64,000 bases of DNA, taken from contig CM075982.1 in the NCBI GenBank assembly GCA_038087875.1, positions 50,592,001-50,656,000 on the forward strand, in the 5' to 3' direction. Below the pieces are notes generated by a model that did not search any database, was not told where the DNA came from, and saw only the letters and a list, made by a program, of their open reading frames with translations. The first letter of the stretch is position 1; every line of letters begins with the position of its first letter. The translations under genes were made by a program, and so were the position numbers. Positions 3,701-25,850 of this stretch are shown piece by piece. The DNA comes from Malacoraja senta. Its lineage: Eukaryota.

Positions 3701-5784
3701 AGTGCGGTTCTGCTCGCCCCATCACACAAAGAATGTGGAGGCTTTGGAGAGGGTGCAAAGAGTTATCAAAATGATGACTGGATTAGAGGTTATTAGCTAC
3801 AGTGAGATGTTGGACAGACTTGGTTTGTTTTCTCTGGAATGCCAGAGGTTCACGGGAGACCTAATAAAATAATGAGAGGCAGAGATAGGGTAGACAGTCA
3901 GAACCTTTTTCACAGGGTGGAAATACGATAGCTTTAAGGTGAGGGAGAGATACGCAGAGCATGTGTTTCTGCACGGAGGGTGATGGGGGCCTGGAATGCG
4001 CTGCCAGGGATGGTGGTGGAGGCAGGTACAATAATGGTGTTTAAGATGCATTTAGATAGACACATGGATATGCAGGGAATGGAGGGATATGGATCATGTG
4101 CAGGCAGAGGAGATTAGTTTATAACTTGGCATCATGTTCGACACGGGCATTGTGGGCCGAAGGGCCTGTTTCTGCGCTGTACTGTTCTATGTTCTATGTA
4201 TCTGAAGGAAAAGCTGGTCAGGGGACTAAAACTGGTCGTGAATGTGTTAAATTGCCAGGATGAAACCGGCCTGCCTTCTCTCCTGGGTAAGCGATTAACC
4301 AGTGACCTAATTGAGTTGCTTAAGATGATTAACATGGCTTGATACAGGAGACGGAGAGGAATGAGATCTGCTGGTGGGGGAGCACAGAACGAGGGCATGG
4401 ACTGTCATAGTGTCATCAACAAAGAATGGAAAGAGTCGCCCTCCCCCCAGAGGCCCCTCTCCCCCCAAAATAATCTGGTGCTGGGTGAAAATGTTAATAA
4501 CATTCAAACATTGAAATTGCTGTTTAATAGTCACACAGCACAGAAACAGGCCCTTCAGCCCAACTCATCCATGCATACCAAGATGCCCATTTAAGCTAGT
4601 CCCACCTGCCCATGTTTGGCCCATATCCTTCCAAACCTTTCCTATCCATGTCCCTGTCCAAATGTGTTTTAAATGCTGTTATAGTACCCGGGTGGCATAG
4701 TGGCGCGGCAGTAGAGTTGCTGCCTTGCAACGTCAGAGACCTGGGTTCGATCCTGACTATGGGTGCTGCCTGTACAGTTTGCACGTTCTCCCTGTGACAG
4801 CATTGGTTTTGTCTAGGTTGCATTCTCACCCCAGTCACTCCCTCTTTCCCCCTCTCCCATCAGACAAGAGGTACAGAAGTGTGAAAACGCACACCTCCAG
4901 ATTCAGGGTGTGGGCTCCACCTTTCATGAGTCATCGATGCAGGCTCTGCTTTGTTCTGTACCTTCCCATACCTCTAGTTTCACCCTCCCTGAGTCTGATG
5001 AAGGATCTCGACCCGAAACATCACCGGAGCTGCTGCCCGACCCAATGAGTTACACCAGCAATTTGTATCTATCTACAGTTTCTTCCCAGCTGTTGTCAGG
5101 CAACTGAACCGTCTTCTCATCGGGCAGAGTGCTATCCTAACCTCCCATCTAACCTCATTGGAGACCTTCGGACTATCTGTAATCGGACTTTACAGGAGCG
5201 CTCTCGAGTTGTTGATAGGACGGTTCAGTTGCCTGATAACAGTTGGGAACAAACTGTCCCTGAATCTGGAGATGTGCCCACGTGAATCTGTGGAATAATT
5301 CTGTGTTCTGTCACTTCCTGAATATTGCCCCACCCTGAGGTCAGTTGCTAGGTAACCGAGCCATTGAAAAAATGAATGGATATTAAAAAATGGAAGCAAA
5401 GTACATTGAAAATCTTCCTTCAATCAGAGTGATTTTTAATGGAATGCCGTTTAATAAAGCTTAATTGGATTTGTGATTAAGATTTCATCCTTAATCACTT
5501 TAAATTGTAAATTATGTGGTTTGTACAAAGAGTGGGAGTGTGTTCCTAATGAGACGCTCTGTGATAAAAATTGCTGGATCAAGTTGGCTTCCCATGGATC
5601 GAGAGACGGCGGCTCCTGCTTAACTCAGCATTCATTCTATCTGTGATCTATTGCTGGCATTAAGTTCTAAATTAACACATGGTTAAAGGCTCCACTATTA
5701 GTCCGAAAAAAGAAGGCTCCAATATAATTTATTATCGACCATAGTCATTGTAAAATAGCTGCTGCAATCCAGGACTTGGGTACT

Positions 5785-5907
5785 CTGTCTGTCTGTCATT
5801 GTTTCCGTCTCTTTCTCTCTCACTCTCACTGTCTGTTTCTGTCTCTGTCTCTCTCTGTCTCTCTTTGTCCCGCTCTCTGTCTCTCTGATTCTCACTGTCT
5901 GCTTCTG

Positions 5908-5943
<36 letters not shown>

Positions 5944-6003
5944 TCTCTGTTAGTTTCTGTCTCTCTGTCTGTCTGTCTGTCTGTCTGTCTCTCCCGATCT
6001 CTG
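5785..6003. repeat. (TC)/(TCTG)n microsatellite
   Basis: Direct reading. Confidence 0.95.
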
Positions 6004-7571
6004 CATTGAGCCTCAGTGTTGTTCAAATGTGCAGTGCATTTGGCAGTGTGCCGGGATGGTTTACAGGTTACAGAGTGGGCCCGAGTTTTACCTGGCCATG
6101 AACCTCTGCTTTCTTTGCCCGTGTAACAGCCGTGATTTCATGTCAGTGTAAACTCTTTGTATCCATTCCGATAATATTGCATACGTTATGTATTTTGATT
6201 GATTGATTGAAAGATATAGCATAGAAACCGAAGACTGACACAAACTGTTGGAGTAACTCAGCGTGTCAGGCAGCATCTCTGGAGAGAAGGAATAGGTGAT
6301 GTTTCGGGTCAAGACCCTTCAGACAATATTTCAAGTGCAGTCTCACCGACATCATGTACAACTGTAACATAACGTCCCAACGTCTCCACTCAATGCCCTG
6401 ACTAATGAAGGCCAGCGTATCAAACGCATTCTTCACAACCTGTGTCACCACTTTCATTTGAACAGAGTTTGCATAGGAAGGCATTGGGACAGGTACATGG
6501 ATAGAAAAGGTTTAGAGAGATATGGGCCAAACACAGGCTGGTGTGACTAGCATACATGGGGCATCTTGGTTGGGCTGAAGGGCCTGTTTCTGTGTTGTAT
6601 TACTCTTTGTAGGGTTCAGATGCCTAAATGAGACTAGGCCAATATGGACGAGGTGTGCTGGAGGGCCTGTTTCTGTGTTGCTCTATAACTTTAAAGCATT
6701 AATTGCCACTGCAAGGAGGATAGTTAATAGTAGGTCATGCTCAGCTAACTTGGCAGAATGCATCAATAAAGTTTCAGAGAATTTAGTAGATGCCATCTAC
6801 ATAGATTCTCAGGTGATGTTTTATAAAGCCCCAGAAGAAATCTACGAGTTAGTAGCAAAGTGGATGGATGTTAGTTCAAACGGAGAAGGAAGAGAAAGAT
6901 AGAAAATGAAATGCATCTTATAGGGGGGATTTTATAGAGGGGTACAAATAATGAGGGATATAGATAAGGTGAATACACAGAATCTTTTACCCAGCGTAAT
7001 GGAATCAAGAACCAATGGACATAGGTTCAAGGTGAGGGGAAAGATTTAACAGGAACCCGAGGGGCAATTCTTTTATACAAAGGGTGGTGGGCATACGGAA
7101 CAAGCTACCAGAGGAGGTAGTTGAGTCAGATACCATAACAGCATTTAAAAGACCCATGGATAGGAAGGGTTTGGAGGGATATGGCCCAATCGCGGGCAGG
7201 TGGGACGTGTATATGGGGCGTCTTGGTTGGCATGGGCGAGTTTTGCCAAAGGACCTGTTTCCATGCTGTATGAATGTATGACTGTCTCACAGTAGGGGGC
7301 AATTTACAGAGGGTCAATTAACCTACAAACCTGCACGCCTTTGGCATGTGGGAGGAAACCAGAGCACCAGGAGGAAACCCACACCCACATGGTCACAGGG
7401 AGAATGTGTGAACTATGCACAGACAGCACTCAAAGTCAGGATTGAACCTGGATCTCTGGCGCTGTAAGGCAACAGGTCTAACCACTGCACAGCCCTTTTT
7501 TTAAGACAGATCTTAAACATCCTGCCAAATTTGTAAAGGTGTGAATCAATGAGTAATGCTGGAGCAATGCT

Positions 7572-7710
7572 TCTTCTTCTTGCATATGGCGTGCACAGCC
7601 TAACGTTGTAGGACAACTTGTTCTATTTGATCTTATTTGATTGTGCACGCCGGGTTGATTGCATTCGTCGAAACAGGGCGGACCACGTGAAGGTTGCAAT
7701 CTTCCACCCC
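7572..7710 (-). mobile_element. 139-nt SINE-like retroposon: ribozyme head + 3' stem-loop + (GAA)n tail
   Basis: Flanked by TSD ggagcaat(g/a)ct at 7561-7571 and 7711-7721; 10-bp stem GGCGTGCACA/TGTGCACGCC; AAGAAGAAGAA tail; no tRNA-like head. Confidence 0.85.
7657..7710 (-). ncRNA. HDV/CPEB3-like self-cleaving ribozyme, minimal P4 (54 nt)
   Basis: Minus strand GGGGTGG-AA-GATTGCA-ACC-TTCACGT-GGT-CCGCCCT-GTTTCGA-CGAA-TGCAATC = P1, J1/2, P2, P3, L3, P3', P1', short P1.1/P4 linker, J4/2 with catalytic C (7667), P2'. All helices pair, with a G1-U wobble at the cleavage site. Confidence 0.85.
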
Positions 7711-10700
7711 GGAGCAATACTGGGTCTCATGTTATCCCGGCAGACATTTTGACCCATACACCATGTGTGGTCAGTCATTCAGTTTAGTTTAGAGATACAG
7801 CACGGAAACAAGCCCATCGGCCCACCGAGTCCATGCTGCCCAGCGATCACCCCATACACTCGTGCCATCCTACATACTGAGGACAATTTACAACTTTACC
7901 GAAGCCAATTAACCAACAAACCTGCACGTCTTTGGAGTGTGGGAGGAAACTGGAGTACCTGGAGAAAACCCACGCTGTCACAGGGAGAAGGTACAGACTC
8001 CATACAGACAGCAGCCGTAGTCAGGGTCGAAGCGGGTCACTGGCGCTGTAAGGCAGCAGCTGTACTGTTGTGCCGTCATTTGTTAGTGTGCCATTTTATG
8101 TGTACACCCACATATTGTTCGGTAAAATATCTGTTTTAAAGAGTGATCTCTGCAGGATTTTGTTTTCTTGAGTTTAATTGACCCCGTCAATGGTTGATTT
8201 GTCTGCAGTGTGGTGATTTGTAAATAACCTCTCTTATCTTGTGGGTGGGGTCAAGGAAAATGCATTCACGTCACGGCCCTGTTTCCACCAATCTTCCCAC
8301 CACCACGCACAAGAAGCACAAGAAGCACAAGACGACATTGTATGCAGATGCTGCGACGTGTGTTCAGCTCTGGCTGAACAATTTCTAATCTTGTGATGTG
8401 GACTCGACAAGAAGATCTCGTGGGTTGAGGCTGTCTGTTTGAGCTAACATTCGGACTCAACCATAAATGCTCCCATTAGTCAACATCATTTGTTGTCAGG
8501 GTTTGGCGAACTGTGGCTTCTACATTTTTCGACAATGCTTTTGCTTGTTTGACTGAAGATCTGTGAAACCAAGTCCTCATTAAATGGTGGGATCAAGGCG
8601 CAGAGAAATAGTGCAGGGCTGTTTTATGCTGTTTCTTGTCTCGGGCGACGTAGCGGTAGAGTTACTGCCTCACAACGCCAGAAATCTGGGTTTGATCCTG
8701 ACTACGGGTGCTGCCTGTACGGAGTTTTTATGTTCTCCCTGTGACTGTGTGGGTTTCCTCCGGGTGCTCCAGTTTCCTCCCACAATCCAAAGATGTACAC
8801 ATTTGTAGGCTAATTGGCTTTTGTACAATTGTAATTGGCCCAAGAGTGTGTAGGATAGGGCCTGTCTCCACATTGTATCTCTAAAGTCTCCATGGCCTCC
8901 TTCTCCAGCCCTAGTCCTACATTTCCATCCTCATCTTCCTGCCTCCCCTTGTGACAAGTTCACAAGTTATAGGAGTGGAATTAGGCCATTCGGCCCATCG
9001 AGTCCACTCCGCCATTTCAGTCATGGCTGATCTCTGCCCCCTAATCCCCTTTTCCTGCCTTCTCACCATAACCTGTGACACCCGTTCTTATCGAGAATTT
9101 GTCTATCTCTGCCTTCAAACTATCCACTGACGGCCTCCATAGCCCTCTGTGGCAATGTTCCACTGATTAACTACCCTCTGACTAATCCTAATCCTCTCAC
9201 CCCCACCCCCCCTTCATCCGACCGCATTGACTTCACACCAACCTCTATTTCCTCAGGAGTTTGAGCTCTGCCCAAGACCGCAAGAAATGACAGACTTGTA
9301 GATGTAGCCCAGTCCATCACACAGGCCAGACTCCATCCCCACCGTCGACCCTGTCTACACTTCACGCTGCCTCGGTAAAGCAGCCGACAAAAATCGAAGA
9401 CTTGTCCCACCCTGGTCATTCCTCCTCCCCACTTCTATTGGGCAGAAGATACAGAAGCTTGAAAGCGCGCACCACCAGACTCAGGAACAGCTTCTCCCCT
9501 CTGTTATCAGGCTTCTGAATGGTCCTTCCATAAGTGAGGGTACTGTTCGATTCACCTCTATCCCATTGTGGACATTGGGGTTTTTTCATCCTGTAAAGGG
9601 GCGACCAGAACTGTATGCAATAGTTTAGTTTATTTGAGAGATACAGCTTGGAAACAGGCCCACTGGCCCACCGTCCTCACTGACAAGTAATCACCTGTAC
9701 ACTAGCACTATCCTAGACACTACGGACAATTTACAGAAGCCAATTAACCCTCAAACTTGCACGTCTTTGGAATGTGGAAGGAAACTGGAGCACTTGGAGA
9801 AAACCCACGCAGTCACAGAGAGAAGGTACAACTGTGTACAGACAGCAGCCGTCGTCAGGATCGAACCCGGGTTTGTGGCACGGTAAGGCAGCAACTGCTC
9901 CACTGTGCAACTGTGCTGCCAAATGCGACCTGACGGAAGTCCTAGAAAGCTGCATCATGACTTGAATCCAGGTTTGTCCAACATGTCCTTGTAGCTGATG
10001 CCCCCTAATGCAGACTGAAGTATCTGAACCGCACCAGGGGTGTCCCCACTCCACTCGCATGGACCATGGAATAAATGTAAAGTCTCTGGGTCGTCTCTCC
10101 GCCCCTGACACAAACTATGGGACAGTCACAGCCCGTAGATGTATGGCTGGAGCAGTAGATTGTAAATCACTGATAGCCTGGGAACGCTGGATATCAAGTG
10201 TGCCAGGATCAAAGCTGATTCCGTTTGGAAGGTGAAGCATTTTAATTTGGCTTTATGCTGAGAAGAGGCATTGCAATGTGTGGTGATGGTTTTGGAAACG
10301 TATTAAGTTCTCTTTAGAACATAAAACAGCACAGCACAGGAACAGGCCCTTCAGCCCACAATGTCCGTGCTGAACTTAACACCAAGTTAAACTGGAAAGG
10401 TACTGTAAAGGAACTGTAAAGGAACTGCAGATGTTGGCTTACCAAAAAAGGACACACAGTCCTGGAGGAACTCAGCGAGTCAGGCAGCATCTATGGAGAA
10501 CATGGATACGTGATGATGAGTGATGTTTCAGGTTGGGATCCTTCTTCAAACTAATTCACTATGTGCGCTTCTGCTATCCTTATCTCACACCCTTCATCTT
10601 TTAATCTCTGGCCTTTGTCCAACCATCTGCCAATCACCCACCCCTCCTCATCTGTATCCTACCATTCGCCAGGCTTTGTCCCTCCCCTACCTCTTCTCCA

Positions 10701-13085
10701 GCTTTCACCCCCTCCCTCTCCCCCTCCCCCCCCCACATTCAAAATGAAGAAGGGTCCCGACCCAAAACATCATCTATCCATGTTCTCCAGAGATGTTTCT
10801 TGGCCCGCTGAGTTACTCCAGCACTGTCTTTTTTTTTCAAAGTTAAACTGATCTCCAGTGATCCATATCACCGTGGTGTGGTAAAGAATGGGTCAGGATT
10901 CTCCATGGTAAGTCACGGGGAGAGTAGGGGCTGGATGGTGTCTGGATATCCGTGAGACAGCAAAGTGTTGGAAGTAGAGAACTCACTGAGTCCCATGTAC
11001 CCAGCAAGATGGTCACAAACTCCATTGACCAATGTCCTCGTGAGGTCTTGCCAAGCCATGGTGGACAACAAGGAGAGTTCAGAAGGAGCAGCACAGTGGC
11101 CGACCGGTAAAGTTGCTGCCTTACAATGCCATAGATCCGGGATCGATCCTGACTACAGGTGCTGGCTCTACGGACTTTGTATGTTCTCCCCCGTGACCAC
11201 GTGGGTTTTCTTCGGGTGCTCCAGTTTCCTCCCATACTCCAAAGACGTGTAGGTTTGTAGGTTAATTGGCTTCTGGAAATTGTCCCTAGTGCGTAGGGTA
11301 ATGTTAGTGTAGGGTGATTGTTGGTCGGCACAGACATGGTGGGCCGAAGGGCCTGTTTCCATGCTGTTTCGCTAAAGTCTAAAGGCAGGCACTTCCATCC
11401 ATCACTCGATACGAGTGATAAAGAAGGCACAGTGTGCTTGCCTTCATCAGTCGGGCATTGAGTATAAGAGTCAGGAAGTCATGATGCAACTTTATAAGAC
11501 TTTGGTTAGGCTGCATTTGGAGCATTTCATGCAGTTCTGGTCGCCCCATTACAGAAAGGATGTGGAGGCTTTGGAGAGGAGATTTATCATGATTCTGCCT
11601 GGATTGGAGAGGAGAGGTGGGACAAACCTGGATTGTTTTCTCTGAAATGTCTCTAAGGGGAGATCTGGTAGAAATATATAAAATTATGAGAGGCAGAGAC
11701 AGAGTAGACACGTTTTCCCAAGGTGGAGATGTCAAAGATTAGAGGGCATATATTTAAGGTGAGAGGGAGAACATTTAAAGCAGATGTGTGGGGCAAGTTG
11801 TTTTTTAACACATGTTCTGAGTGGAGTCTGAGAGTTTCCAGTGTTTTCTGTTTTTGTCTCAGATTTCCAGCATCTAAAATCAACTTTAGTTTAGTTTAGA
11901 GATACAGCATGGAAACAGGCCCTTTGGCCCACCGAGTCCACGCTGACCAGCAACCCCACACACTAGTTCAATCCTGCACACTAGAGATAATTTTCAGAAG
12001 CCAATTAGCCTCCAAACATGTACTTCTTTGGAGTATGGGAGGAAACTGGAGCACTCGGAGAAAGCCTACACAGTCACAGGGAGAACGTACAAACTCCATA
12101 CAGACAGCACCCGTAGTTAGGATCAAATCTGGGCCCCTGGTTTGCGCTACTGTACCGCCCTTGCCAGGTCATCTCAAATAGTCTTTCAGACCCGTCAAGC
12201 CTGCCCTAACCACCCTCAAAGAATCTGACCTCACAAGCAGTCTGTGGAGTTTGCACATTCTCCCTGTGACCACGTGGGTTTTCTCCGGGTGCTCCGGTTT
12301 CCTCCCACATTTCAAAAATGTGCGGGTTTGTAGGTTAATTGGCTTCTGTAAATTGTGTAGGTGAGCGTTAGAATCTGCGAGTTGATGGGAATGTGTGGAG
12401 AATAAGATAAATGGGTTTAACGTAGGATTTGGGTAAATGGATGGTTGCTGGTTAGCCTGGACTTGGTGGGCCGAAGCATTTCCTGCAGCATTTCACAATG
12501 GCACAACGAGAACTTAATGATGACAGAGAGACACAAGGAACTGCAGATGCTGGTTGAGAAATAAAGACAGAAAGTTCCGGAGTAACTCAACATGTCTGGC
12601 AGCATCTCTGGAGAGCATGAATAAGTGACATTTCAGGTCAGGATTCTTCTTCAGGACCTAATGAGAGGTCTGGATCATCCAGTCAAATAAAACGTCTGTC
12701 TGCTTTAGAAGGTAGAATGGTACAGCACAAGAACAGGCCAGCCCACAATGTCAGTGCCATTGTGTCCACAATGATGCTGAACAAGACTAACATATCTGCC
12801 TGCACGTGATCCATTCCCTACATATCCATGTGCCTATCCAAAAGTCTCTTAAACACCACTATCGTATCTGCCTCCACCACCACCCCTGACAGCATGTTCC
12901 AGGCACCTGCCATCCTCTGTACAATAAAGAGAAAACGTGCCCCATCATCTCCTTTAAACTTTCACCTTAAAGTTACGCCCTCTCACCTTAAAGATACGCC
13001 CTCTAGTATTCCAGTCTATTTCCTGACTGGCTAAATTGGACCTTGAGATGATAGACATCATCCAGTCAATGACAGGAGGTTTGGG

Positions 13086-13385
13086 GCGGGTAACAGTGAC
13101 ACAGCGGTAGAGTTGCTGCCTCACAACACCAGAGTCCCGGGTTCAATCCTGGCCTCGGGTGTTGTCTGTATGGAGTTTGTATGTTCTCCTTGTGACCGGG
13201 TGGGTTTTCTCCAGGTGCTCCAGTTTCCTCCCACACTCCAAAGACTTGCAGATTTGAAGGTTAATTGGCTTCAGTAAAGACTCTAAATTGTCCCTAGTAT
13301 GTAGGATAGTGCTAGTGTACACGGTGATCGTTGGTTGGCGCGGACTCGGTGGGCCGAAGGGCCTGTTTCTGTGCTGTATCTTTTA
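13086..13385 (+). mobile_element. tRNA-derived V-SINE (HE1-like); other copies near 1-200, 7781-8073, 8645-8885, 9625-9920, 11092-11383, 11886-12160, 15087-15409, 37015-37320, 45903-46181, 62125-62390
   Basis: tRNA-like head with B box ggttcaatcc, V-type core ggagtttgtatgttctcc...tttcctcccaca, CR1-like tail gggccgaagggcctgtt. Confidence 0.85.
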
Positions 13386-14542
13386 AAAAAGATGTCAGGT
13401 GATCACTTCATGTGGTCTCCGGGAGAGGGTCCATGTGGAGATTGCTGATCCCTTGGGCAGTGTCCCCGCTTGTGATGGACATCAGTGCAGTCTCGGTGAC
13501 CACCCAGTGCTGGGAAACATAGTCATACAACATGGATACAGGCCCTTTGACCCAACACGTCCATGGTGCCCCATCTACATTAGTCACATTTGCCCGTGTT
13601 TGGCCCATAACTGTGCATGATATCTCTTTTACATTACATGCCAACCAATCAAATGTGGATTTCTCATTTAATATAAATCCACACTCAAATACAGTAAATT
13701 CTCCGGAACGCTGGAGGTTGAGGTGATAGAAGTGTGTAAAATTATGAGAAGCATGGATAGGGTGGACAGTCTTGGGATGGAAATGTCAAATCCTAGAGTC
13801 ATGGAGTCATACAATGTTAAAACAGGCCCTTAGGCCCAACTAGTCCATGCCAACCAAAATGCCCCATCTAAGCTAGTCCCATTTGCCGGCATTCGGTCGA
13901 TACCTCTCTAAACCTTTCCTATTCATGTACCTGTCCAAGTGTCTTTTCAATGCAGTTATTGTACCTGCCTCAACTAACTCCTCTGACAGTGTGTGAATCA
14001 ATGCTGAAACAGAATTTGAACCAAACGGTGCAAAACAAAATTCAGACTGGGTCATTTTGGGGGCAAGAGCCAAGCAGACACGTTCTGAGCCCAGACACTC
14101 GGTTTGGGAGTGATGGACCATGGATAGACACCACCATCTGCTGGTGCTATCCAGTACTGCAACTGGCTGAGATTAATTGCATTCCCTATATAAGAAAGTA
14201 GCTGAAGATAGACACAAAATGCTGGAGTAACTCAGCGGGTCAGGCAGCATCTCTGGAGAAAAAGGAAAAGGTGACGTTTTGGGTTGGAAATCTTCTTTAG
14301 ACAGAGTCAGGGGGGAGGGAAACTATAGGTAGGCAAATGTTCAGAACAAATCAGAGCCGGCACCGATGACCAACGAAAGGTGGAGCCCACAATGATCCAT
14401 TGTTGGCTGTGGAAGAGGTGATAATGAAGGGATATATGGATGCGAACAGTGGAACTGGCAGGACGACTGGGGTGGAGAGAGAAGGAATGCAGGGGTTGCA
14501 TGTAATTAGAACAATTACAGAAAGTAGTTGCCTCAGTACTAA

Positions 14543-15076
<534 letters not shown>

Positions 15077-15725
15077 TAGTTGAGTCGGGTGGTGCAGCGG
15101 TAAGAGTTGCTGCCTCCCAGCTCCAGAGGGCCGGGTTTGAGTCTGATCATGGGTGCTGTCTGTACTGAGTTTGTATGTTATCCCCGTGACCGCGTGGGCT
15201 TCCCTCGGGTGCTCCGGTTCCCACTCACATTCCAAAGACGTGCGAGTTTGTAGATTAATTGGCTTCTGTAAATTGCCCTCTGGTGTGTAGGGAGTGGATG
15301 AGAAAGTGGTATAACATAGAACTAGTAAATAGGGGGACTTGGTGTCAGCGCAAACTTGGTGGGGCGAAGGGCCTGTTTCGACGCTGTATTTCTAAACTAA
15401 ACTAAACTACTATAATCATCAATGACATTTAAACAGGTACATGGATAGGAAAGGTTTAGAGGGATATGGGCAAAATGGGCAGGTGGGGCTGGCATAGATA
15501 GACATCTTTATCGGCATGAACATTTTGGGCCGAAGGGCCTGTTTCCGTACTGTATGATCTATGACTCTCTGTTTTAGTTTAGAGATACAGCAAGGCAACA
15601 GGCCCTTCGGCCAAGCAAGTCCATGCCGCCCATTGATCACCCGTTCAGAAACAAGGAGCGAAGAGTCCGGCGGGGAATTAGATGGTTTATACTTTTCTTC
15701 ACCTGGTTTGGTTTGTCTCTTGCAG

Positions 15726-15798
15726 ATATTAACATGGCCGGGGAGCCCAGGCCCAACAGACCCAAGGGGCTGAAGCGACCCAGTTCCACTTTGTACAG
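15726..15798 (+). CDS. RALY: RALY coding exon 2, 73 nt
   Basis: Acceptor ttgcag|, encodes (D)INMAGEPRPNRPKGLKRPSSTLY, donor AG|GTACCG; phase-compatible with its neighbours. Confidence 0.93.
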
Positions 15799-16002
15799 GT
15801 ACCGTCCTCACCACGTCTGGTAGCTCGGTCAGGCAGAACACCGGGGCTATGATGTAGGAGACAGAGTTTACGGCCATTCGGCCCAACTTGTCCCTACTGG
15901 GGGTTCCAGAAAACCAGATCTCCCCGTGCACTCTTCAGTCGCTGCTCCTTTGTGTGTTGATCCAGCTTCTCCCTAAATTCCATCACTCCGACACTCTGAG
16001 CC

Positions 16003-16478
16003 ATGGGCATTGGGCGTTGAATGTTGGACATTGGGCATTGGGTGTTGAGCATTTGGCATTGTATATTGGGTGTTGGACATTGGGTTTTGAACTTTGGCCA
16101 TTGGGCATTGATGTTGAATGTTAGTCGTTGGGTGTTGGACATTGGGCTTTGAATATTGAGCATTGTGTGTTGGGTATTGTGAGTTGGGCGTTGAGTGTTG
16201 GGCATTGTGTGTTTGGTATTGTGTGTTGGGTGTTGGACATTGGGTTTTGAACTTTGGGCATTGGGCATTGATGTTGAATGTTGGTCGTTGGGTGTTGGAC
16301 ATTGGGCATTGTGAGTTGGATATTGTGTGTTGGGTATTGTGTGTTGGGTATTGTGAGTTGGGCATTGTAAGTTGGGTGTGTGTTGGGTGTTGGACATTGG
16401 GTGTTAGGTATTTGGTGTTGAATGTTGGGCATTGGAAATGGGGCATTGGCCGTTGGACCATGGACATTGGACATTGAC
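16003..16478. repeat. Degenerate 7-mer minisatellite (TTGGGYR)n
   Basis: ttgggca/ttgggtg/ttggaca units with higher-order duplication; explains the repetitive ORFs in all frames. Confidence 0.95.
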
Positions 16479-16864
16479 GTTAAACGTTAACACTGGACAT
16501 GGAACAGTACAGCACAGGAACAGGCACAATGCCCGTGCTTAATATGACACCAAGTTAAACTAATCTCCACTGCTTGCACGTGATCCATATCCCTCCAGTC
16601 CCTGCATATCCATGTGCCAATCTAAACACCTCTTAAAACAGAGATGGTTGAATCAGATACAGTCGCCATGTTTAAGAAATATTTAAATAGTCAAGGTGTA
16701 GAATGAGACAGATCTAATGAGGGCAGATGGGATCAGTGTGAAGGAGCAAAAGAGTCAGCATGGACAATGTGGGCTGAAGGGCCTGTTTCTGTGCTGTAAC
16801 ACTCTAGTAAGTACTTTATTCACAGTTTTACCACCAGTGATTATTTTTTTCTCTCTCCTTAAAG

Positions 16865-16915
16865 CACCAGCTACGACTTTGCTTACGATTACTTCAGGGA
16901 TGATTTCTACGAAAG
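16865..16915 (+). CDS. RALY: RALY short Tyr/Asp-rich exon (51 nt, or 45 nt from acceptor 16871)
   Basis: Polypyrimidine tract then aaag|caccag|; encodes (S)TSYDFAYDYFRDDFYE(R), homologous to human GYIFDYDYYRDDFYDR; donor AG|GTAAC. Length is a multiple of 3. Confidence 0.88.
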
Positions 16916-17617
16916 GTAACGTCCGTGATTTGTATTGATTCCGCCGCTATTTGGGTCAGTAATTAGATCGTAAGATAAGTCCAATGCACCAATTGCAAGC
17001 TGTACGGTCAGCTGTGGCTCAGGAGCTGGGTCCCAATCTCCCCCCCCCCACCCCCCCGACACTGGAGCCAGGGACAGGGGCGAGCTCCACACTGGTGGGG
17101 AGGTTCCTTATTGGGGCAGGATGTTGGTCTGGGTCCTGCCTCTCCCTCTCAGGCACATATCCCGACCAATTTGTCTCCATCCACTAACGTCACCAAAGCA
17201 GGTGATTTACTGGGTTACGGGGAGAAGTCAGGGCAATGGGCTCCAGTGGGAAAACATAGATCAGCCATGATGGTGCAGACTTGATGGGCCGAATGGCCTA
17301 ATTCTGCTCCTGTGTCCTATGGTATCATGTTATTCCTGGTAGAAACGCTGATAGTATACATTGCTGCATATTTGTTGGCTGCAAAGTGCTTTGGCGTGTC
17401 TGACCTCCAAACCTCTGAGCACAAGCCTTCCATGGCTTCTGAAATATCTGTTGATCAATTAGCACAGTAAGAAGCCATGGACAAGGTGGGCCGAAGGGTC
17501 CGTTGCCAAGCTGTATGACCCCAGAAGCCATTCAGCTCTTCAGATTGTTCTGCCATACAGATTGTAGATGATCCGTATCTTAACTTTGTCAACCAGATTT
17601 CCTTCAGGTAGCCTTTT

Positions 17618-17872
17618 ATCTCTATCTCTATCTCTCACACACTCTCTCCATCACACACACACACTCCCACTCTCACGCACACTCTCACTCTCTCTCACAC
17701 ACACTCTCTCTCCCTCTCATTCTCTCTCATGTTCTCTTGCACACACACACACTCTCTCCTCACACACTCTCTCACTCTCACGCTCTCTCTTGCACTCTCG
17801 CACACTCACGATCACTCACGCTCACTCTCTCTCTCTCTCTCTCACTCCCCCCTCTCTCACACTCCCTCTCTC
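17618..17872. repeat. (CT)/(CA)n compound microsatellite forming the polypyrimidine tract of the RALY exon at 17881
   Basis: Direct reading. Confidence 0.95.
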
Positions 17873-17880
17873 CACCGCAG

Positions 17881-18041
17881 GATGCACGAATATTCGAGTC
17901 GACCCTCGCTGGTCCCCAGGGCCGTCCCGGTGAAGCGGCCTCGAGTGATTGTCCCCGTGCTCCGTCGACGGAAGTCCAACCTCCCGCTGAAGCTGATGAC
18001 CCGCTCCAGCACAATGGCAAAGAACGCCAACAAGTTAAAAC
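17881..18041 (+). CDS. RALY: RALY coding exon with NLS (PVKRPRV), 161 nt
   Basis: ccgcag| acceptor; MHEYSSRPSLVPRAVPVKRPRVIVPVLRRRKSNLPLKL...; donor C|GTGAGT at 18042. Confidence 0.93.
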
Positions 18042-19501
18042 GTGAGTCGTGTCTGACTTCAGCGCGGAATAAAACCAGTTAGCCTAACCGCTGGGCTAGA
18101 AATATATGTCTCCACGTGTTTATATGTAGACACAGGGAACAGCAGATGCTGGAATCTTGTGTAGGACACAAGTGCTGGAGGAATTTGGGACACAAGGAAC
18201 CGTAGGTGCTGGTTTGCAAAAAGGACACAAAGTGCTGGAGTAACTCAGCCGGTCAGGCAGCCTCTCTGGAGAACATGGAAGGTGAAAGGTTTCGGGTCAG
18301 GACCCTTCTTCAGACTGATTATGGTGGTGGGGGGAGAAAGTTGGAAGGGAGGAGAGGCAGGACAAAGCCTGGCCAGTGATACAGGTGGGTGGGGGCAGTT
18401 GGATTGGCAGACAGTTAGGCAAAGGCCAGGGATGAAAAGACAAAAGGTGTGAAGTAAGGATGCGAATTATGAATCAGTCTGAAGAAGGGTCCTGACCTAT
18501 CCACGCCCTCCAGAGATGCTGCCTGACCTGCTGAGTTACCCCAGCACTTTGTGTTTCCATGCCATACAACCACCTTCCCAATCATAGAATCTTCTCCTTT
18601 AAGTGCTTGGCTTGAGTATATGTTGATGCTATAGAACAGAGAACAGTACAGCGCAGTGAACAGGCCCTTCGGCCCGCAATGTCCGTGCCGAACATGGTGC
18701 CAAGTTAAACTAATCTCCTCTGCCTGAACCTGATCCATATTCCTCCATTCCCTGCATATCCATATGCCTATCCAAAAGCCTCTTAAATGCCACTATTGTA
18801 CCTGCCTCCACCACCGCCCCTGGCAGCACCACTCCAGACACCCTCCACACTTGTTCCGCACATCCCCTTTAATCTCAGGATAACCAGAATAGTGCAAAAG
18901 CGAAGTCCGTAGTCAACCAAAGACACATTCCACTGAAGATTCTAGTTACTGAGGTTAGTGTTGTGCAGTGTTCAACAGCCTGATGGTTGTTGGGAAGAAG
19001 CTGTTCTTGAAGGTGGTGGTCATGGTTTTCAGGCTCCTTGATCTTCTTCCTGATGGGCGACAGCACCTCCTGTAGATCCCTTTGATGGTGAGGAGGTCCG
19101 CACCCGTGATGGACCGGGCAGTGTTCACCACTCTCTGTAGCTTCCATGGTTCCTGGGCGTTCGAGGTGTTGAACTAGGCCGTGATGCACCTAATTGATAT
19201 GGTTGTGTGCAGTGCATGTGTGTGCTTGTGCGAGTTCACCACCAGGTCCCGGGTCAGTTATCAACTTCACTGCAAGATTCAGGCCCCTGCCTGAGATCTA
19301 AAACATCGACGTTTAAAAACCGTTTGGGAAAATAGATAGTTTTGGCAGAAGCGCGAGCTCTCTGTCGGTTAATGCCTCATCATGTGATGTTAAACTTCTT
19401 CCTCTCTGTCCCTCTCCCTCTCTGTCTCCTTCCCTCTCTCTACCCCCACCATCTCTATCCCCCTCCCTCTCTCTCCCCCTCCCTCTCTCTGCCCTTCCCA
19501 G

Positions 19502-19615
19502 TGAAATCCAATGAGCTACAGCGGATTAAAGTCGAGCTGACACAGATCAAGTCCAACATTGACTCGTTACTGGTTAGACTGGAGGAGATCGCGAAGGAGA
19601 AAGTCAGTCACACAG
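19502..19615 (+). CDS. RALY: RALY coiled-coil/leucine-zipper exon, 114 nt
   Basis: (L)KSNELQRIKVELTQIKSNIDSLLVRLEEIAKEKVSHT, the hnRNP C-family oligomerisation helix; cccag| acceptor, CAG|GTGGGT donor. Confidence 0.93.
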
Positions 19616-20263
19616 GTGGGTGGGTGAGTCCCTCTGTCGCTGCTGCCCCCTCCCCCCTGACCCCCCTCTCCAGACCTGACCTCCTCTTCCCCGGAGAAAA
19701 CTCATGCAGTCACAGGGAGAACATACAAACTCAGGCAGTGAGGCAGCAACTCTACCCATTGTTAATTACTAGCCAACTGTTCATCTTAAGAACATAGCTA
19801 GTCCCACCTCATTATCATAGAAAGATAGTTCTTTTAATCTCCAACTTTCTGAGATCTGATGAAAAATTGTTGACCAGCCTCATGTTACAGCTACACTGAA
19901 AGTACAGATTGGAAACAAGTGCAGGGACCACAAGAAGGTAGATTGGAAGATTAGGAAATCATCCCTTCTCTCCCCACAAACAATACCTGATCTCCTGCAT
20001 ATTCATATTATTCCCTGTTTATATAATAGATTACATTGACTTAAAAAGACATTTGGACTGATATATGGACAGGAAGGGTTAGAGGAAATGGGCCAAATGC
20101 AGGCAAATGGAACTGGCCCAGAATGGCAACTTGGTCAGCATGGATTAGGTGGGCTGAAGGGCCTGTTTCCATGCCGTACAGTTATGTGCGTGCTTGGGTG
20201 GGGGGGGGGGGGGGGTGGTCGTTGCGTGAAATACACCCGCTCTGAATTTGGATCTTTCTCCAG

Positions 20264-20430
20264 CGTCGAGGAAGAAGGCAGACGAAGGACAGACTGAGGC
20301 GTCTCACGGAGATTCCACTTCAGAAACTGCAGAGACGGTCACGGAGGAGGCATTTGAGGTGGAGGAGGTGGACACTGTCGATCTGGAGCAGGAAGAGGCA
20401 GCGGGAGAGGATGATTGCGAGGAGGAAATG
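20264..20430 (+). CDS. RALY: RALY acidic-tail exon, 167 nt
   Basis: tttctccag| acceptor; (A)SRKKADEGQTEASHGDS...EEAAGEDDCEEEM; ATG|GTTAGT donor; phases fit. Confidence 0.85.
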
Positions 20431-20489
20431 GTTAGTGTGGCTCTGCAGCAGTGATCGCTGCACCCTCAACCCTCAGTAGTTGAGTTAAG

Positions 20490-20795
20490 GAGTTTGGATT
20501 AGTTTAGTTTAATTTTGTTTTGTTTAGTTTAGATTAGATTAGTTTAGATTTGGTTTAGTTCAGATTAGTTTAATTTAGATTAGTTTAGTTAAGATTGGAT
20601 TAGTTTAGTTAAGATTAGATTTGTTTAGTTAAGATTGGATTAGTTTAGTTAAGATTGGATTCGTTTAGTTTAATTCAGTTATGGTTTAGTTTTAGTTTTT
20701 AATTTTAATTTAGTTTTGTATTAGTTTTAAAATTACATTATTTGATTGGTTTAGATTAGATTGGTTCAGTTAGTTTCATTTGGATTAGTTTAGTT
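20490..20795. repeat. (TTTAG/TTAGA)n array, expanded 3' tail of a minus-strand retroelement
   Basis: Runs directly into tgtcacgtgtac..., the reverse complement of the LINE end that usually carries (CTAAA)n. Confidence 0.85.
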
Positions 20796-21971
20796 TGTCA
20801 CGTGTACTGAGGTATTGAAAAGCTTTTATTTGCCTGCTATCTAATCAAAGAAAAGACTAAATATGATTAAAATCGAGCCATCCACTGTGCGCAGATAAAG
20901 GATAAAGTGTACAACTTTAGTGCAAATATATAACATTGAAGTCCAATAAAGTCTATCAGTGTGGCAATTACTCTTTGCATGTTTCCTTAAGACATGTTGC
21001 AGTTGTACAAGACGTTGGTGAGGCCACACTTGGAGTATTGTGTTCAGTTATGGTCACCCTGCTATAGGAGGAATGTCATTAAACTGGAAAGAGTGCAGAG
21101 AAGATTTACGAGGATGTTGCCAGGAGTCGAGGGCCTGAGCATGGGGCTGCATGATTTAAAGATTCTATACCTCTGACAATTAACTCTTCCCTTTAATATC
21201 GCAATAACCAACCAGAGTGCAGTGGAACCATTGCCCAGCGATGGGCCAAGTTTGACCCTGCACTGCGTCCCCACATAAATCTTCAATGAAACACCCTTCA
21301 TAGCAAACTGTCTTCACTATTTAGACTTTAGACACTTTGCGAAATAAATTGGGGTTGTATTTAAATTAAAAGCTAATAATTAAGATTATGCAACTCTTGA
21401 CTCCTTATGGAGGTCACATTTTTAAAATGTGCTTTTATAACCCAGCAGGTTTGTTAGTTCATGATCCAATTTGAAAAGTAGAAGGGTTGGTTCAATATGC
21501 TTTACTGGCACGGAATGCAGCCCAGTGGGCTTTAGAGAACAGAATCCACTGTCAGGGTTATCTGAGGAGCTGGCTGCACGTCTGACTTGCACCAGCACAC
21601 TCTTGGCAGTGGAGAGTCGTGCTGCAGCTTGGATGATTTAACCCATGAAATCTGCCCTGTAACACCTTGCTCTCCATTGTAAAGAGAAATGCAAGGACTT
21701 GTTCTTCTGCAACACCTCTCTTTGGTCAGCAGGGAACACGGCACTGACCCAGCGATCAGCAACTCTGTCACCAAGCTGGTAAAGCTGCTGCCTCACATCG
21801 CCAGAGACACGGGTTCAAATCCGACCTCGGGTTTAGTTTAGTTTATTGTCACGTGTACAGTGAAAAGCTTTTGTTTCGTGCTAACCAGTCAGCGGAAAGA
21901 CAATACATGATTACAATTGAGCCAATTGTAGAAGACAATTGGACAGCTTCAGGGATAGGAAAGGTTTAGAT

Positions 21972-22869
21972 CAGTGCTTCTTAAACAATTTCAGTGTCAT
22001 TCATCCTTTATCACAAAATTTCATTCACCCTCGACTAAGTTTTCTTATGTTTTTTGGTAATTTTCGTCTTATTCTCCCTCGTGTATAATTTTATATATAA
22101 TTTATTCTGTCACATGAGCAAAAAACTTAAATTAACTCATTTCTTAAGTGTTTATTGTTTTCAACATTTTGAACATCATAAAAATATGTAAAGAAAACTA
22201 GGAGTGAAAAAGAAAAAAAAAGGTTTAATTACCACTGGAGTGGGAAAATCATTTTATTAGAATGATAAAAAAAAACATTCCTATGTCTAAACTCTGGGCT
22301 TCAGCCCCATCCTACTCTTTCGGGCTTGGATTACTGCAGGGTTTTTTTCTTGGAAAACTAGCTAAAAAACCCCATGGAGTATGCGATTTAATATATTAGT
22401 ATCCAACTAATATAACTTCCTATAACTCTCCCCGACGACAGGTCACAATACCACCAAATATCAACTTTGGTAGCTAAATTGCTACACAAAGTAAAGTTAC
22501 AGTTCAACAGTTGCTTGCGGTGATCCTCCAGCTCCAGTGTTGTAATTTATATATTTATGATCCCACTAGCTCGTCTGGTCTTCCCCAAAAGGTTATATTA
22601 CAGTAAATTTGGGAAATATCCTGCTACTTTGAAATTAGGAAACCATAGGTAGAGAGAAAAAACATATCAAATTTCCAGCTTCACTGCCATTAAAATCAAT
22701 AAGAGCTTACTAACCACTTTAATGGCAATACCTTTTTTTAAGTATAGAAACAAATATATAAACTGAATAAATCAAGTCATTCACCCTTCATTCACCCCTC
22801 TAGTTTAATTCACCCCAAAATAATTTAATTTGCCCTTGGGTGAACCATTCACCAGTTTAAGGAGCACTC
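21972..22869. mobile_element. hAT (Charlie-like) non-autonomous element
   Basis: TIR CAGTGCTTCTTAAAC / GTTTAAGGAGCACTC; imperfect 8-bp TSD gtttagat/atttagag; interrupts a CR1 3' fragment. Confidence 0.8.
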
Positions 22870-24686: not shown

Positions 24687-24728
24687 GAGGCTCGTCACAG
24701 AGCAATGGCAGAGGCAACGTTAGAATAG
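24687..24728 (+). CDS. RALY: RALY last coding exon (EARHRAMAEATLE*)
   Basis: Strong acceptor ctctccctgcag|; TAG at 24726-24728; donor AAG|GTTTGT 3 nt after the stop. This resembles human RALY, whose stop is in the penultimate exon. Spliced CDS 864 nt = 287 aa. Confidence 0.75.
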   Translation, partial: EARHRAMAEATLE

Positions 24729-25127
24729 AAGGTTTGTAATTTTATCACCCAATTTGTTTCTTGCACCATGAGAGGAATAGATTGGGTAGATGCACAAAGT
24801 CTCTTGCCCAGAGTAGGTGAATCAAGGACCAGAGGACATCGGTTTAAGGTGAAGGGGAAAATATTTAATAGGAATTTGAGGGGTAACCTTTCCACACAAA
24901 GGGTGGTGGGTGTATGGAACAAGCTGCCAGAGCAGGTAGCTGAGCTGGGACTATCCCAATGTTTAAGAAGCAGTTAGACATGGATAGGACAAGTTTGGAG
25001 GGATATGGGCCAAACGCAGGCAGGTAGGACTAGTGTAGCTGGGACATGTTGGCCTGTGAGGGTAAGTTGGGCCGAAGCATTTTCGTTCGGACATATTTGG
25101 AGTATTGCGTACAAGTCTAGTAGAGTA

Positions 25128-25268
25128 AGCTCATTGGACGAGGAATTCTGGGGGAGTGTGTTCATTGGGCAAGGAACTTGATGGAGTACGCTCATTGGAC
25201 GAAGAACTCAAAGAGTGTGTTCATTGGACGCAAAGCTCTGGGAGAGGAAGCTCGTTGGATGAGGAATC
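25128..25268. repeat. ~30-bp tandem repeat x5
   Basis: Units built on (c/t)tcattggacgaggaa. Confidence 0.85.
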
Positions 25269-25418
25269 AGAGCAGTGGGCCATTATTAACGTTGATGGTT
25301 CTCTAGTTAATGAAGTGTAGCCTTCCCATCGAGTCCACCTGTCACACTGTGTTGGGTGAATGTTTCGACAGTTGCGACAGATTGCTTCCTGCATAAATTG
25401 GCTTTTTTATTTTTACAG

Positions 25419-25850
25419 ACTGAAAGCCAGCGGTTCCCAGCAGGCAACAAGTAATGGGGGGAGCGATCGAAATGGACTGAGCCTCGTGTCGCTTAATTAA
25501 CCGAGAAGCCACCAAAGGACATCAGTGTTTCACCTCAGCTAGACCAGGAGGATGGGGACATCTGAAAACATTTGGGCATTCCCACATCACTGAGCAGATG
25601 ATTAAAACAAAACCTGTTTGTGCCTCAGGATTGGCTGCAAGAAACACCGCGCACAAAGATCAAACTGATGGCCAATCAATGGCCTGTAACTCTCTGGGAT
25701 AATCAGTAGATGTCAGATTACTCATTCATTAGTTGTGTTCTCTTGGCATGTACAATACTGTTGTCAATCTGCATCATTCTCGAGAATATTACCAATCTGG
25801 ATTACTTTTTCGATGAGGGAGAATAAACCACCTCTTTCAAATTTTTAGAC
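25419..25850 (+). other. RALY: Putative RALY terminal 3'UTR exon with polyA signal
   Basis: Acceptor ttttttatttttacag| at 25418, non-repetitive sequence, AATAAA at 25822-25827 (another at 26552-26557). The 3' end is approximate. Confidence 0.6.

What the first reader, a model, noticed from the sequence alone, without database searches (positions are those of the whole stretch)
7561..7721. Ribozyme-headed SINE: a complete minimal HDV/CPEB3-like ribozyme forms the 5' end of a 139-nt retroposon
Seen in sequence (minus strand): GGGGTGG AA GATTGCA ACC TTCACGT GGT CCGCCCT GTTTCGA CGAA TGCAATC. P1 (GGGGTGG/CCGCCCT) has the G1-U wobble, P2 is a perfect 7 bp, and P3 is ACC/GGT. L3 UUCACGU, the GU after P1 and the J4/2 CGAA (catalytic C at 7667) match the mammalian CPEB3 ribozyme core as I recall it, and P4 is reduced to about 5 nt. 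G1 (7710) is the first base after an 11-nt TSD, so the insertion starts exactly at the predicted cleavage site. The element ends in a (GAA)n tail and has no tRNA/7SL/5S Pol III head. Established: HDV-like ribozymes process the 5' ends of R2 and RTE-type non-LTR retrotransposons, and internally deleted R2 derivatives keep the ribozyme. Inference: this is a promoterless non-autonomous family released from host read-through transcripts by self-cleavage and copied by a partner LINE (the GAA tail suggests the RTE clade). I do not know of such a family described in chondrichthyans. It is antisense to RALY, so it would not cut RALY pre-mRNA.
Basis: partly seen in the sequence, partly recalled or inferred. 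Interest (0 to 1): 0.92.

Follow-up and report, generated by a model that had tools for sequence, protein, structure and literature searches.

The report
Ribozyme-headed mini retroposon in skates
A 139-base jumping element that inserted recently upstream of a skate's RALY coding exons starts exactly where a very small hepatitis-delta-type self-cutting RNA fold should cut, and tens of thousands of sequence pieces from several related species carry the same element, so it probably frees its own RNA from host transcripts instead of carrying a promoter (cutting itself was not tested).

Summary
Minus strand 7710-7657 fits a complete nested double-pseudoknot HDV-like fold: P1 7 bp with G1.U, P2 7 bp, P3 3 bp, L3 UUCACGU, G37-U38 and J4/2 CGAA. 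It is collinear with CPEB3 numbering up to nt 38, and P4 is replaced by a 5-nt linker. A strict descriptor hits once in the window and never in 300 shuffles. No Rfam model reaches its gathering score.

New here: three other skate genomes (Leucoraja, Amblyraja, Rhinoraja) have an empty orthologous site. This shows a lineage-specific 139-bp insertion with an 11-nt target duplication that abuts G1 directly.

In three DNA runs, 12,000-21,000 contigs per run lie exactly on 7570-7710. Their ends pile up at 7710 and at an (AAG)n tail.

A second, ancient CPEB3-like head at 8247 (+) is shared by all four skates. Its helices differ from the first by compensatory changes, and its core is conserved.

No Pol III head was found, so this is best called a ribozyme-headed non-autonomous LINE derivative, not a true SINE. 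Both LINEs in the window are CR1-like.

This scan had already noted the same family on other pieces of this genome.

The parts
7572..7710 (-). Whole 139-nt retroposon (G1 = 7710; 3' end is the (AAG)n tail)
   Evidence: It is absent from the orthologous site in L001, L003 and L004. Contig depth rises more than 10^4-fold exactly over 7568-7710 in four runs.
7657..7710 (-). 54-nt minimal (P4-less) HDV/CPEB3-like ribozyme fold. P1 7710-7704/7681-7675; P2 7701-7695/7663-7657; P3 7694-7692/7684-7682; L3 7691-7685; G37U38 7674-7673; linker 7672-7668; J4/2 7667-7664.
   Evidence: Pair table. Descriptor: 1 hit against 0 in 300 shuffles. Rfam HDV_ribozyme 20 bits and HDV-F-prausnitzii 14.4 bits, both end to end but below gathering.
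7667..7667 (-). Predicted catalytic cytosine C44 (equivalent to CPEB3 C57 and HDV C75)
   Evidence: It is the first base of the 4-nt J4/2. No alternative letter reaches 10% at 7667 in any of four runs, while the neighbouring 7666 varies at 28-47% (CGAA, CUAA, CAAA).
7588..7651 (-). Body: a 10-bp long-range stem (7651-7642 with 7597-7588) enclosing a small hairpin (7617-7605). Presumed 3' recognition module.
   Evidence: The stem appears in the MFE and centroid folds. The last 32 nt (7572-7603) show no variant at 10% or more.
7572..7582 (-). (AAG)n microsatellite tail
   Evidence: Read directly. The loose-end consensus just outside 7570 ends in TTCTTCTT on the + strand in several hundred contigs per run.
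7561..7571 (.). Target-site duplication, 3'-side copy (GGAGCAATGCT on +)
   Evidence: The sequence is single-copy in the empty sites of three skates (alignment A2).
7711..7721 (.). Target-site duplication, 5'-side copy (GGAGCAATACT on +), abutting G1
   Evidence: One mismatch to the other copy.
8247..8335 (+). Second, ancient CPEB3-like head (about 8247-8297) followed by a (GCACAAGAA)n tail-like repeat (8307-8332). In the window copy P3 is broken by two CpG-to-CpA changes.
   Evidence: Rfam CPEB3 model: 14.6 bits here and 22 bits, E = 3.8e-4, on the Rhinoraja orthologue, which keeps P3 GCG/CGC. It is present at the orthologous site in all four skates (A3). Tandem repeat.

Best explanation
This is a young, lineage-specific copy of a very abundant non-autonomous non-LTR retroposon of skates. 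The element has no promoter of its own. It is transcribed as part of longer host or read-through transcripts. Its first 54 nt fold into a minimal HDV-like ribozyme with a CPEB3-type core and a 5-nt linker in place of P4. The ribozyme cuts immediately 5' of G1, which gives the RNA a defined 5' end. A LINE-encoded endonuclease/reverse transcriptase then recognises the conserved 3' stem and (AAG)n tail and copies the RNA by target-primed reverse transcription, producing an 11-nt target duplication. Shown: the insertion, the TSD, the family size, the copy ends at G1 and at the tail, the fold, and helix covariation with a second family. Inferred: catalysis, dependence on co-transcription, and the identity of the partner LINE.
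For: Empty orthologous sites exist in Leucoraja erinacea, Amblyraja radiata and Rhinoraja longicauda. The two flanks overlap by 11 nt in the first two and by 6 nt in the blastn of the third. Contigs laid per run were 13,128, 12,125, 21,229 and 1,087, and they lie only on 7570-7710. Depth falls from about 2-6 million to under 60 within two bins on both sides. At 7710, 226, 224 and 517 contigs run on into unrelated, AT-rich sequence (agreement 0.35). At 7570-7573 they run on through TTCTTCTT. Many contigs are at least 95% identical, and the window copy differs from the majority at 7604 only, plus a roughly 50% site at 7652, so the copy is young. The element's 31-mers occur in runs of at least 12 coded organisms. 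All HDV-type features are present, with 0 descriptor hits in 300 shuffles. The HDV_ribozyme and F. prausnitzii models align end to end, skipping only P4. Variants of 10% or more inside the ribozyme sit at three CpGs. The two in P1 keep pairing (U5.G32 to U-A; G6-C31 to G.U), and the J4/2 variant sits at the position that differs between HDV (U) and CPEB3 (G). The second head at 8247 has a different P2, a P1 pair 6 switched from G-C to C-G, a P1 shortened on both strands, and P3 ACC/GGU against GCG/CGC. Its L3, GU, UUC.A and C.AA are kept. P4-less minimal HDV-like ribozymes of the same layout (drz-Mtgn, theta) cleave in vitro (PMC10879173). Ribozyme-defined 5' ends and bipartite non-autonomous derivatives are established for R2, RTE and Ingi-clade elements (PMC5786205; PMC3414825 and PMC3185411). 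No tRNA, no A or B box and no Rfam family at gathering were found.
Against: No cleavage assay was done and no RNA 5'-end data exist, because the runs are held only as contigs and the RNA-labelled run looked like DNA. No Rfam HDV-type model reaches its gathering score (20 vs 50 bits; 14.4 vs 44; the CPEB3 model does not hit this copy). P1.1 is weak (one G-C plus U.U). The nested MFE fold pairs the 5' G-run with C56-C59 instead, a possible competing structure. Covariation rests on only two independent heads. Within-family variants are CpG changes that do not by themselves prove selection. The sense-strand excess of G-to-A over C-to-U is seen at all variable CpGs, so the invariance of C44 is not specific evidence. 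The partner LINE was not found in the window or in 146 kb of other batoid loci.
Confidence: 0.7

Rival explanations
1. The head is a true HDV-like fold inherited from a LINE 5' end, but the element's 5' end is set by transcription initiation from an internal promoter, as with Pr77 of L1Tc/NARTc, which is both promoter and ribozyme. The fold would then serve mainly to protect the 5' end or bind the LINE protein, with cleavage weak or dispensable.
For: In trypanosomatid L1Tc/NARTc the same first 77 nt are both an internal promoter and an HDV-like ribozyme (PMC3383444). The stable double pseudoknot is reported to protect 5' ends (PMC13708176). P1.1 is weak and P4 is absent. A sharp 5' end fits a fixed start site equally well.
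Against: No Pol III boxes and no known promoter motif were found. A start site that coincides to the base with the predicted scissile bond in two different head families (7710 and 8247) is most simply explained by cleavage. P4-less ribozymes of this layout are active in vitro.
Confidence: 0.2
2. The ribozyme-like fold is an inactive relic or a chance resemblance, and the element is an ordinary internally deleted LINE fragment family.
For: All Rfam scores are below gathering. There is no experimental evidence.
Against: The descriptor gave 0 hits in 300 shuffles. The fold is the family consensus across about 10^4 contigs in several species, with no helix-breaking variant at 10% or more. Helices covary with the 8247 head while the core is kept. 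The copy ends fall exactly at G1.
Confidence: 0.07
3. It is a conventional Pol III SINE whose head is a diverged small-RNA gene.
For: The size (139 nt), the copy number and the microsatellite tail resemble SINEs.
Against: ARAGORN finds no tRNA. The best A-box and B-box matches have at least 3 mismatches. No Rfam family, including tRNA, 5S, 7SL and snRNA models, is found at gathering or at E up to 10 on the slice.
Confidence: 0.03

Closest known systems
Mammalian CPEB3 ribozyme (Rfam RF00622)
   Same: The layout is collinear through nt 38. L3 (UUCACGU), G37-U38, P1.1 (one C-G plus U.U) and the 4-nt J4/2 CGAA are identical. The neighbouring 8247 head (Rhinoraja copy) also shares P3, giving a 13-nt run GCGUUCACGUCGC identical to the Rfam consensus.
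   Different: There is no P4 hairpin; a 5-nt linker replaces 18 nt. P2 and most of P1 have different sequences. It is multicopy and mobile rather than a single conserved intronic locus. The CPEB3 model does not hit this copy and scores 22 bits (GA 35) on the other head. The phage ribozyme drz-Mtgn-1 shares 12 of those 13 core bases, so the core match is not proof of common descent.
Minimal HDV-like ribozymes (drz-Mtgn, theta ribozymes of gut Caudoviricetes phages)
   Same: They have the same P4-less architecture of about 50-55 nt: a short linker between P1.1 and the catalytic C, J4/2 C-N-A-A, and L3 UUC.CGU. They are shown to self-cleave in vitro (PMC10879173).
   Different: Those are reported almost only in phages (about 99%), mostly directly downstream of tRNAs, where they act as 3'-trailer processors. 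This one heads a vertebrate retroposon and defines a 5' end.
Ribozyme-terminated non-LTR elements and their non-autonomous derivatives (R2 and R2 SIDEs; L1Tc/NARTc, ingi/RIME; RTE)
   Same: An HDV-like ribozyme sits at the exact 5' end and releases the element from a co-transcript. Short bipartite derivatives keep the 5' ribozyme and the 3' recognition end (PMC3414825, PMC3185411, PMC4035085, PMC5786205).
   Different: Those ribozymes have a P4 and are larger. R2 is rDNA-specific. NARTc and RIME are protozoan elements with poly(A) tails. This element is dispersed, has an (AAG)n tail, numbers of the order of 10^4 copies in a vertebrate, and has a P4-less head.
Bipartite non-autonomous Vingi derivatives (hedgehog, anole, alligator)
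   Same: They are short ORF-less elements made of a LINE 5' end plus a LINE 3' end. Vingi is sister to Ingi, which carries an HDV-like ribozyme (PMC5786205). Earlier scan notes propose a Vingi-like partner.
   Different: That paper does not list Vingi among the clades known to carry a 5' ribozyme. I could not test whether this element shares its ends with a Vingi LINE.

Membership tests
HDV-like (delta-like) self-cleaving ribozymes | Nested double pseudoknot: P1 and P2 form the outer knot, P3 and P1.1 the inner knot | tested here: met
   P1 7 bp, P2 7 bp, P3 3 bp, P1.1 C22-G37 (+U.U). 0 descriptor hits in 300 shuffles.
HDV-like (delta-like) self-cleaving ribozymes | Cleavage site 5' of G1, with a G.U wobble closing P1 | tested here: met
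   G1.U36. G1 is the first inserted base next to the TSD and the point where contig ends pile up.
HDV-like (delta-like) self-cleaving ribozymes | Catalytic cytosine as the first base of J4/2, followed by N-A-A | tested here: met
   C44-G45-A46-A47. C44 shows no variant at 10% or more, and position 45 varies G/U/A.
HDV-like (delta-like) self-cleaving ribozymes | P4 helix | tested here: not met
   Only a 5-nt linker, UUCGA. P4 is dispensable in the described minimal subclass.
HDV-like (delta-like) self-cleaving ribozymes | Mg2+-dependent self-scission abolished by C-to-U at the catalytic position | not testable with these tools
   Needs an in vitro assay.
Rfam HDV_ribozyme / CPEB3_ribozyme / HDV-F-prausnitzii | Score at or above the curated gathering threshold | tested here: not met
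   20 vs 50 bits and 14.4 vs 44 bits. The CPEB3 model gives no hit on this copy.
Minimal HDV-like ribozymes (drz-Mtgn / theta type) | HDV core with P4 replaced by a short linker, about 50-55 nt in total | tested here: met
   54 nt. The layout matches the drz-Mtgn-1 sequence printed in PMC10879173.
Minimal HDV-like ribozymes (drz-Mtgn / theta type) | Theta subgroup: lies within a few nt downstream of a tRNA in a phage genome | tested here: not met
   No tRNA nearby. The context is a vertebrate retroposon.
Non-LTR retroposon (TPRT product) | Insertion flanked by a target-site duplication, with an empty site in relatives | tested here: met
   11-nt TSD and three empty orthologous sites.
Non-LTR retroposon (TPRT product) | Multicopy, with a common 3' tail | tested here: met
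   12,000-21,000 contigs per DNA run, with the (AAG)n tail in the loose-end consensus.
SINE in the strict sense | Pol III internal promoter head derived from tRNA, 7SL, 5S or snRNA | tested here: not met
Bipartite non-autonomous LINE (SIDE/NARTc-like) | 5' and 3' parts shared with an autonomous LINE | not tested
   No partner was found in the window or in 146 kb of fetched loci. The only hints are the two-peaked depth profile and the module-like loose ends at 7629-7634 in organism B. The window LINEs have CR1-type 8-nt tails.

The most novel reading that the evidence does not exclude
The mammalian CPEB3 ribozyme may be an exapted head of an ancient retroposon or LINE of this kind. The skate elements would then be living mobile relatives of it, rather than convergent HDV-like folds. 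This would also make P4-less 'minimal' delta ribozymes a normal, functional part of vertebrate genomes, not a phage speciality.
Probability: 0.15. Interest if true: 0.85.

Novelty: new variant of a known kind. Interest (0 to 1): 0.7.

Why it matters
Ribozyme-defined 5' ends are known for R2, RTE and Ingi-clade elements. Here a 54-nt, P4-less version heads a 139-nt element that has reached the order of 10^4 copies in skates. The literature describes this ribozyme class as almost confined to gut phages. If it is active, three things follow. A promoterless element can amplify massively using only a tiny ribozyme and a LINE-recognition tail. Minimal delta ribozymes are present in vertebrates. And thousands of potential self-cleavage sites are scattered through skate transcripts, with sense-oriented intronic or UTR copies able to cut host RNAs. 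The close core match to CPEB3 also makes the unexplained origin of that mammalian ribozyme testable. The empty sites show recent activity, so the family should also be usable as a phylogenetic marker in skates.

Tried and rejected
- My first loose descriptor matched everywhere and was discarded in favour of a strict one.
- blastn of the element against the window found no other copy. blastn against 146 kb of RALY loci from Leucoraja, Amblyraja, Rhinoraja and Mobula also found none. Copy-by-copy covariation could therefore not be done.
- A metagenome scan for the ribozyme core found nothing.
- Rhinoraja RALY isoform X2 was not on record. The longest isoforms obtained through the listing of cluster members worked.
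- Mapping the RALY mRNA 5' UTR onto the window hit only (CT)n low-complexity DNA, so intron membership is unresolved.
- The Vingi paper (Kojima 2011) and the supplements of Kojima 2018 are not held, so Vingi tails and 5' ends could not be compared.
- I considered reading the invariance of C44 as evidence of selection. I rejected this because the same sense-strand G-to-A over C-to-U asymmetry occurs at the other CpGs.
- I considered treating the 13-nt identity with CPEB3 as evidence of homology. I weakened this because the phage drz-Mtgn-1 shares 12 of the 13 bases.
Full report
**Observation.** Written as pairs:
- P1 is G1.U36, G2-C35, G3-C34, G4-C33, U5.G32, G6-C31, G7-C30.
- P2 is 10-16 with 48-54, seven Watson-Crick pairs.
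- P3 is A17-U29, C18-G28, C19-G27.
- L3 is UUCACGU.
- G37-U38 follow P1, giving a P1.1 of C22-G37 plus U21.U38.
- A 5-nt unpaired linker (UUCGA) stands where P4 would be.
- J4/2 is C44-G45-A46-A47, with C44 at 7667.

The numbering is collinear with CPEB3 up to nt 38. The features named for CPEB3 in PMC4836649 are all matched: U20.G25, C22, A23, a P1.1 of one G-C and one U-U, and a 4-nt J4/2 beginning with the catalytic C followed by G-A-A. A strict descriptor asked for G1, a 7-bp P1, a 3-bp P3, L3 U-Y-C-N-C-G-Y, G after P1, C-[UGA]-A-A and a 6-8 bp P2. It finds this one locus in the window and nothing in 300 dinucleotide-preserving shuffles.

Rfam does not file the motif anywhere. On an 86-nt slice, HDV_ribozyme scores 20 bits (gathering 50) and the F. 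prausnitzii HDV model 14.4 bits (gathering 44). Both align end to end and skip P4. The CPEB3 model does not hit this copy at all. No family reaches gathering anywhere in the window.

**It is an insertion.** I fetched the RALY loci of three other skates through their RALY proteins: L001 from Leucoraja erinacea, L003 from Amblyraja radiata and L004 from Rhinoraja longicauda.
- Window 7284-7571 aligns to L001 1-287, and window 7711-8998 aligns to L001 277-1543.
- The same pattern holds in L003 (1-361 and 351-1610) and in L004 (to 3115 and from 3110).
- The multiple alignment shows one copy of GGAGCAATGCT in the three relatives. In the window there are two copies, one with a single mismatch, flanking 7572-7710.

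The 139-bp element was therefore inserted in the window's lineage after it split from these genera. It has an 11-nt target duplication, and G1 directly abuts the duplication. The 3' junction is an (AAG)3-4 tail with 2 nt of microhomology to the target.

- 13,128, 12,125, 21,229 and 1,087 contigs lie only between about 7570 and 7710.
- Summed depth is 2-6 million within the element, about 20,000 in 7711-7721 and under 60 beyond. The drop on the other side is equally sharp.
- At 7710, 226, 224 and 517 contigs continue into unrelated AT-rich sequence (agreement 0.35).
- At 7570-7573, several hundred contigs per run continue through TTCTTCTT, which is a longer AAG tail.
- Most contigs are at least 90-95% identical.
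- The window copy differs from the majority only at 7604, and at a roughly 50% site, 7652. This fits a recent insertion.
- The element's 31-mers occur in runs of at least 12 coded organisms, including RNA-labelled assemblies. One such run looked like DNA, so I do not count this as expression.

**Variation inside the ribozyme.** Variants at 10% or more occur only at three CpGs.
- C31/G32 in P1: both changes keep a pair (G6.U31 and U5-A32).
- G42 in the linker.
- G45 in J4/2, giving CGAA, CUAA or CAAA. This is the position that differs between CPEB3 and HDV.

P2, P3, L3 (including its CpG) and C44 show no variant at that threshold. I do not treat this as proof of selection. The same excess of sense-strand G-to-A over C-to-U is seen at all variable CpGs, and contig depth is a poor estimator.

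The depth profile has two peaks (head and 3' part) with a dip at 7623-7655. In organism B, about 110 contigs break off at 7629-7634 in each direction. This suggests that the head and the 3' part are separate modules that occur with other middles, as expected for derivatives of a longer element.

**A second head gives covariation.** The Rfam CPEB3 model gave a partial hit at 8247-8280 on the plus strand. This motif lies at the orthologous site in all four skates, so it is old.
- In Rhinoraja it keeps P3 GCG/CGC and scores 22 bits (E = 3.8e-4 on the slice; gathering 35). It has a 13-nt run identical to the CPEB3 consensus.
- Leucoraja and Amblyraja have lost one P3 CpG, and the window copy has lost both. 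This is neutral decay, not exaptation.
- Compared with the 7710 head, P1 pair 6 is C-G instead of G-C, and P1 is one pair shorter through a loss on both strands.
- P3 differs at two of three pairs by double changes.
- P2 is an unrelated sequence that still largely pairs.
- L3, G-U, UUC.A and C.AA are conserved.

This is the pattern expected of a functional RNA fold, but it rests on two independent heads only. A (GCACAAGAA)n repeat follows the second head. Its TSD is no longer recognisable, and I could not measure its copy number.

**What it is not.** ARAGORN finds no tRNA. The best A-box and B-box matches have three or more mismatches. It is therefore not a Pol III SINE in the strict sense.

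The two LINEs in the window (27.6-31.5 kb, with esterase-type ORF1, APE and RT; and RT at 34.7-35.9 kb) end in 8-nt repeats at 27521-27545 and 33257-33278. They share nothing with the element. They are CR1-like and are not the partner. Earlier notes of this scan name a Vingi-like LINE with a CPEB3-type head. I could not reach that sequence and treat it only as a lead.

**Context.** RALY's first coding exon is at 14689-14954 on the plus strand, with further exons up to 26188. The element is about 7 kb upstream on the opposite strand. The 5'-UTR exon could not be placed because the mRNA's 5' end is (CT)n.

**Mechanism.** The best reading is a promoterless, ribozyme-headed, non-autonomous LINE derivative.
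1. Co-transcription with host RNA.
2. Self-cleavage 5' of G1 by the minimal delta-type ribozyme.
3. Recognition of the conserved 3' stem (7651-7642 with 7597-7588) and the AAG tail by a LINE reverse transcriptase.
4. Target-primed reverse transcription to the very 5' end.

P4-less ribozymes of the same layout cleave in vitro (PMC10879173). Ribozyme-defined 5' ends and bipartite derivatives are established for R2, RTE and Ingi-clade elements. Catalysis here is inferred, and I give the full mechanism 0.7. The main rival (0.2) is a Pr77-like situation, in which the same head also acts as a promoter or mainly as a protective or binding structure.

[quoted passage not shown] Kienbeck 2024 reports minimal, P4-less delta ribozymes as about 99% confined to Caudoviricetes phages, after a limited eukaryote search. 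Full-text searches found no HDV-like ribozyme report for skates or sharks. This is therefore a new variant of a known kind.

The similarity to CPEB3 is striking. However, the phage ribozyme drz-Mtgn-1 shares 12 of the 13 core bases, so common descent with CPEB3 remains speculative. The same family was already noted many times by this scan on other pieces of this genome. The empty sites and the orthologous decay series of the second head appear to be new.

Noticed in passing
window 8247-8335 (+); L001 about 792-867, L003 about 869-945, L004 3653-3736: A second CPEB3-like ribozyme head with a (GCACAAGAA)n tail-like repeat is shared at the orthologous site by four skate genera. P3 decays stepwise by CpG loss: Rhinoraja intact, Leucoraja and Amblyraja half lost, window fully lost.
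   Followed up: partly
window 7623-7655 and loose ends at 7629-7634: Contig depth dips in the middle of the element. In organism B about 110 contigs break off there in each direction, as if the 5' head and the 3' part were separate modules also found with other middles. This is a hint of a longer parent element.
   Followed up: no
window 7648-7680 (CpG sites of the element): Among family variants, sense-strand G-to-A is consistently more frequent than C-to-U at the same CpGs (G32 vs C31, G42 vs C41, G45 vs C44). The cause is unknown; it could be subfamily structure or a strand-biased mutation process.
   Followed up: no
window 27521-31549 (-) and 33257-35938 (-): Two CR1-like LINE remnants. 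One has esterase-type ORF1, APE and RT ORFs and an (ATGTTTCT)n-type 8-nt tail. The other has an RT ORF and a (TACATAGA)n tail. Neither is related to the ribozyme element.
   Followed up: partly
window 7296-7490, 7778-8072, 8652-8861: Copies of a common short repeat family, with many 70-85% matches in all fetched skate loci, flank the insertion site. The ribozyme element landed between two of them.
   Followed up: no
window 14689-26188 (+): RALY coding exons map at 14689-14954, 15725-15798, 16860-16916, 17879-18041, 19502-19615, 20261-20431, 24686-24731 and 25417-26188, using a 96-100% identical skate mRNA contig (L002).
   Followed up: yes
window 7541-7571 and the empty sites in L001, L003, L004: The target itself carries a local imperfect direct repeat (AATGCTGG twice) that predates the insertion. 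It is not part of the TSD.
   Followed up: yes
window 5783-5993 and 16004-16476: Long low-complexity arrays: (CT)/(CTGT)n upstream of RALY, and a 7/14/160-nt TTGGGYR-type minisatellite in a RALY intron.
   Followed up: no
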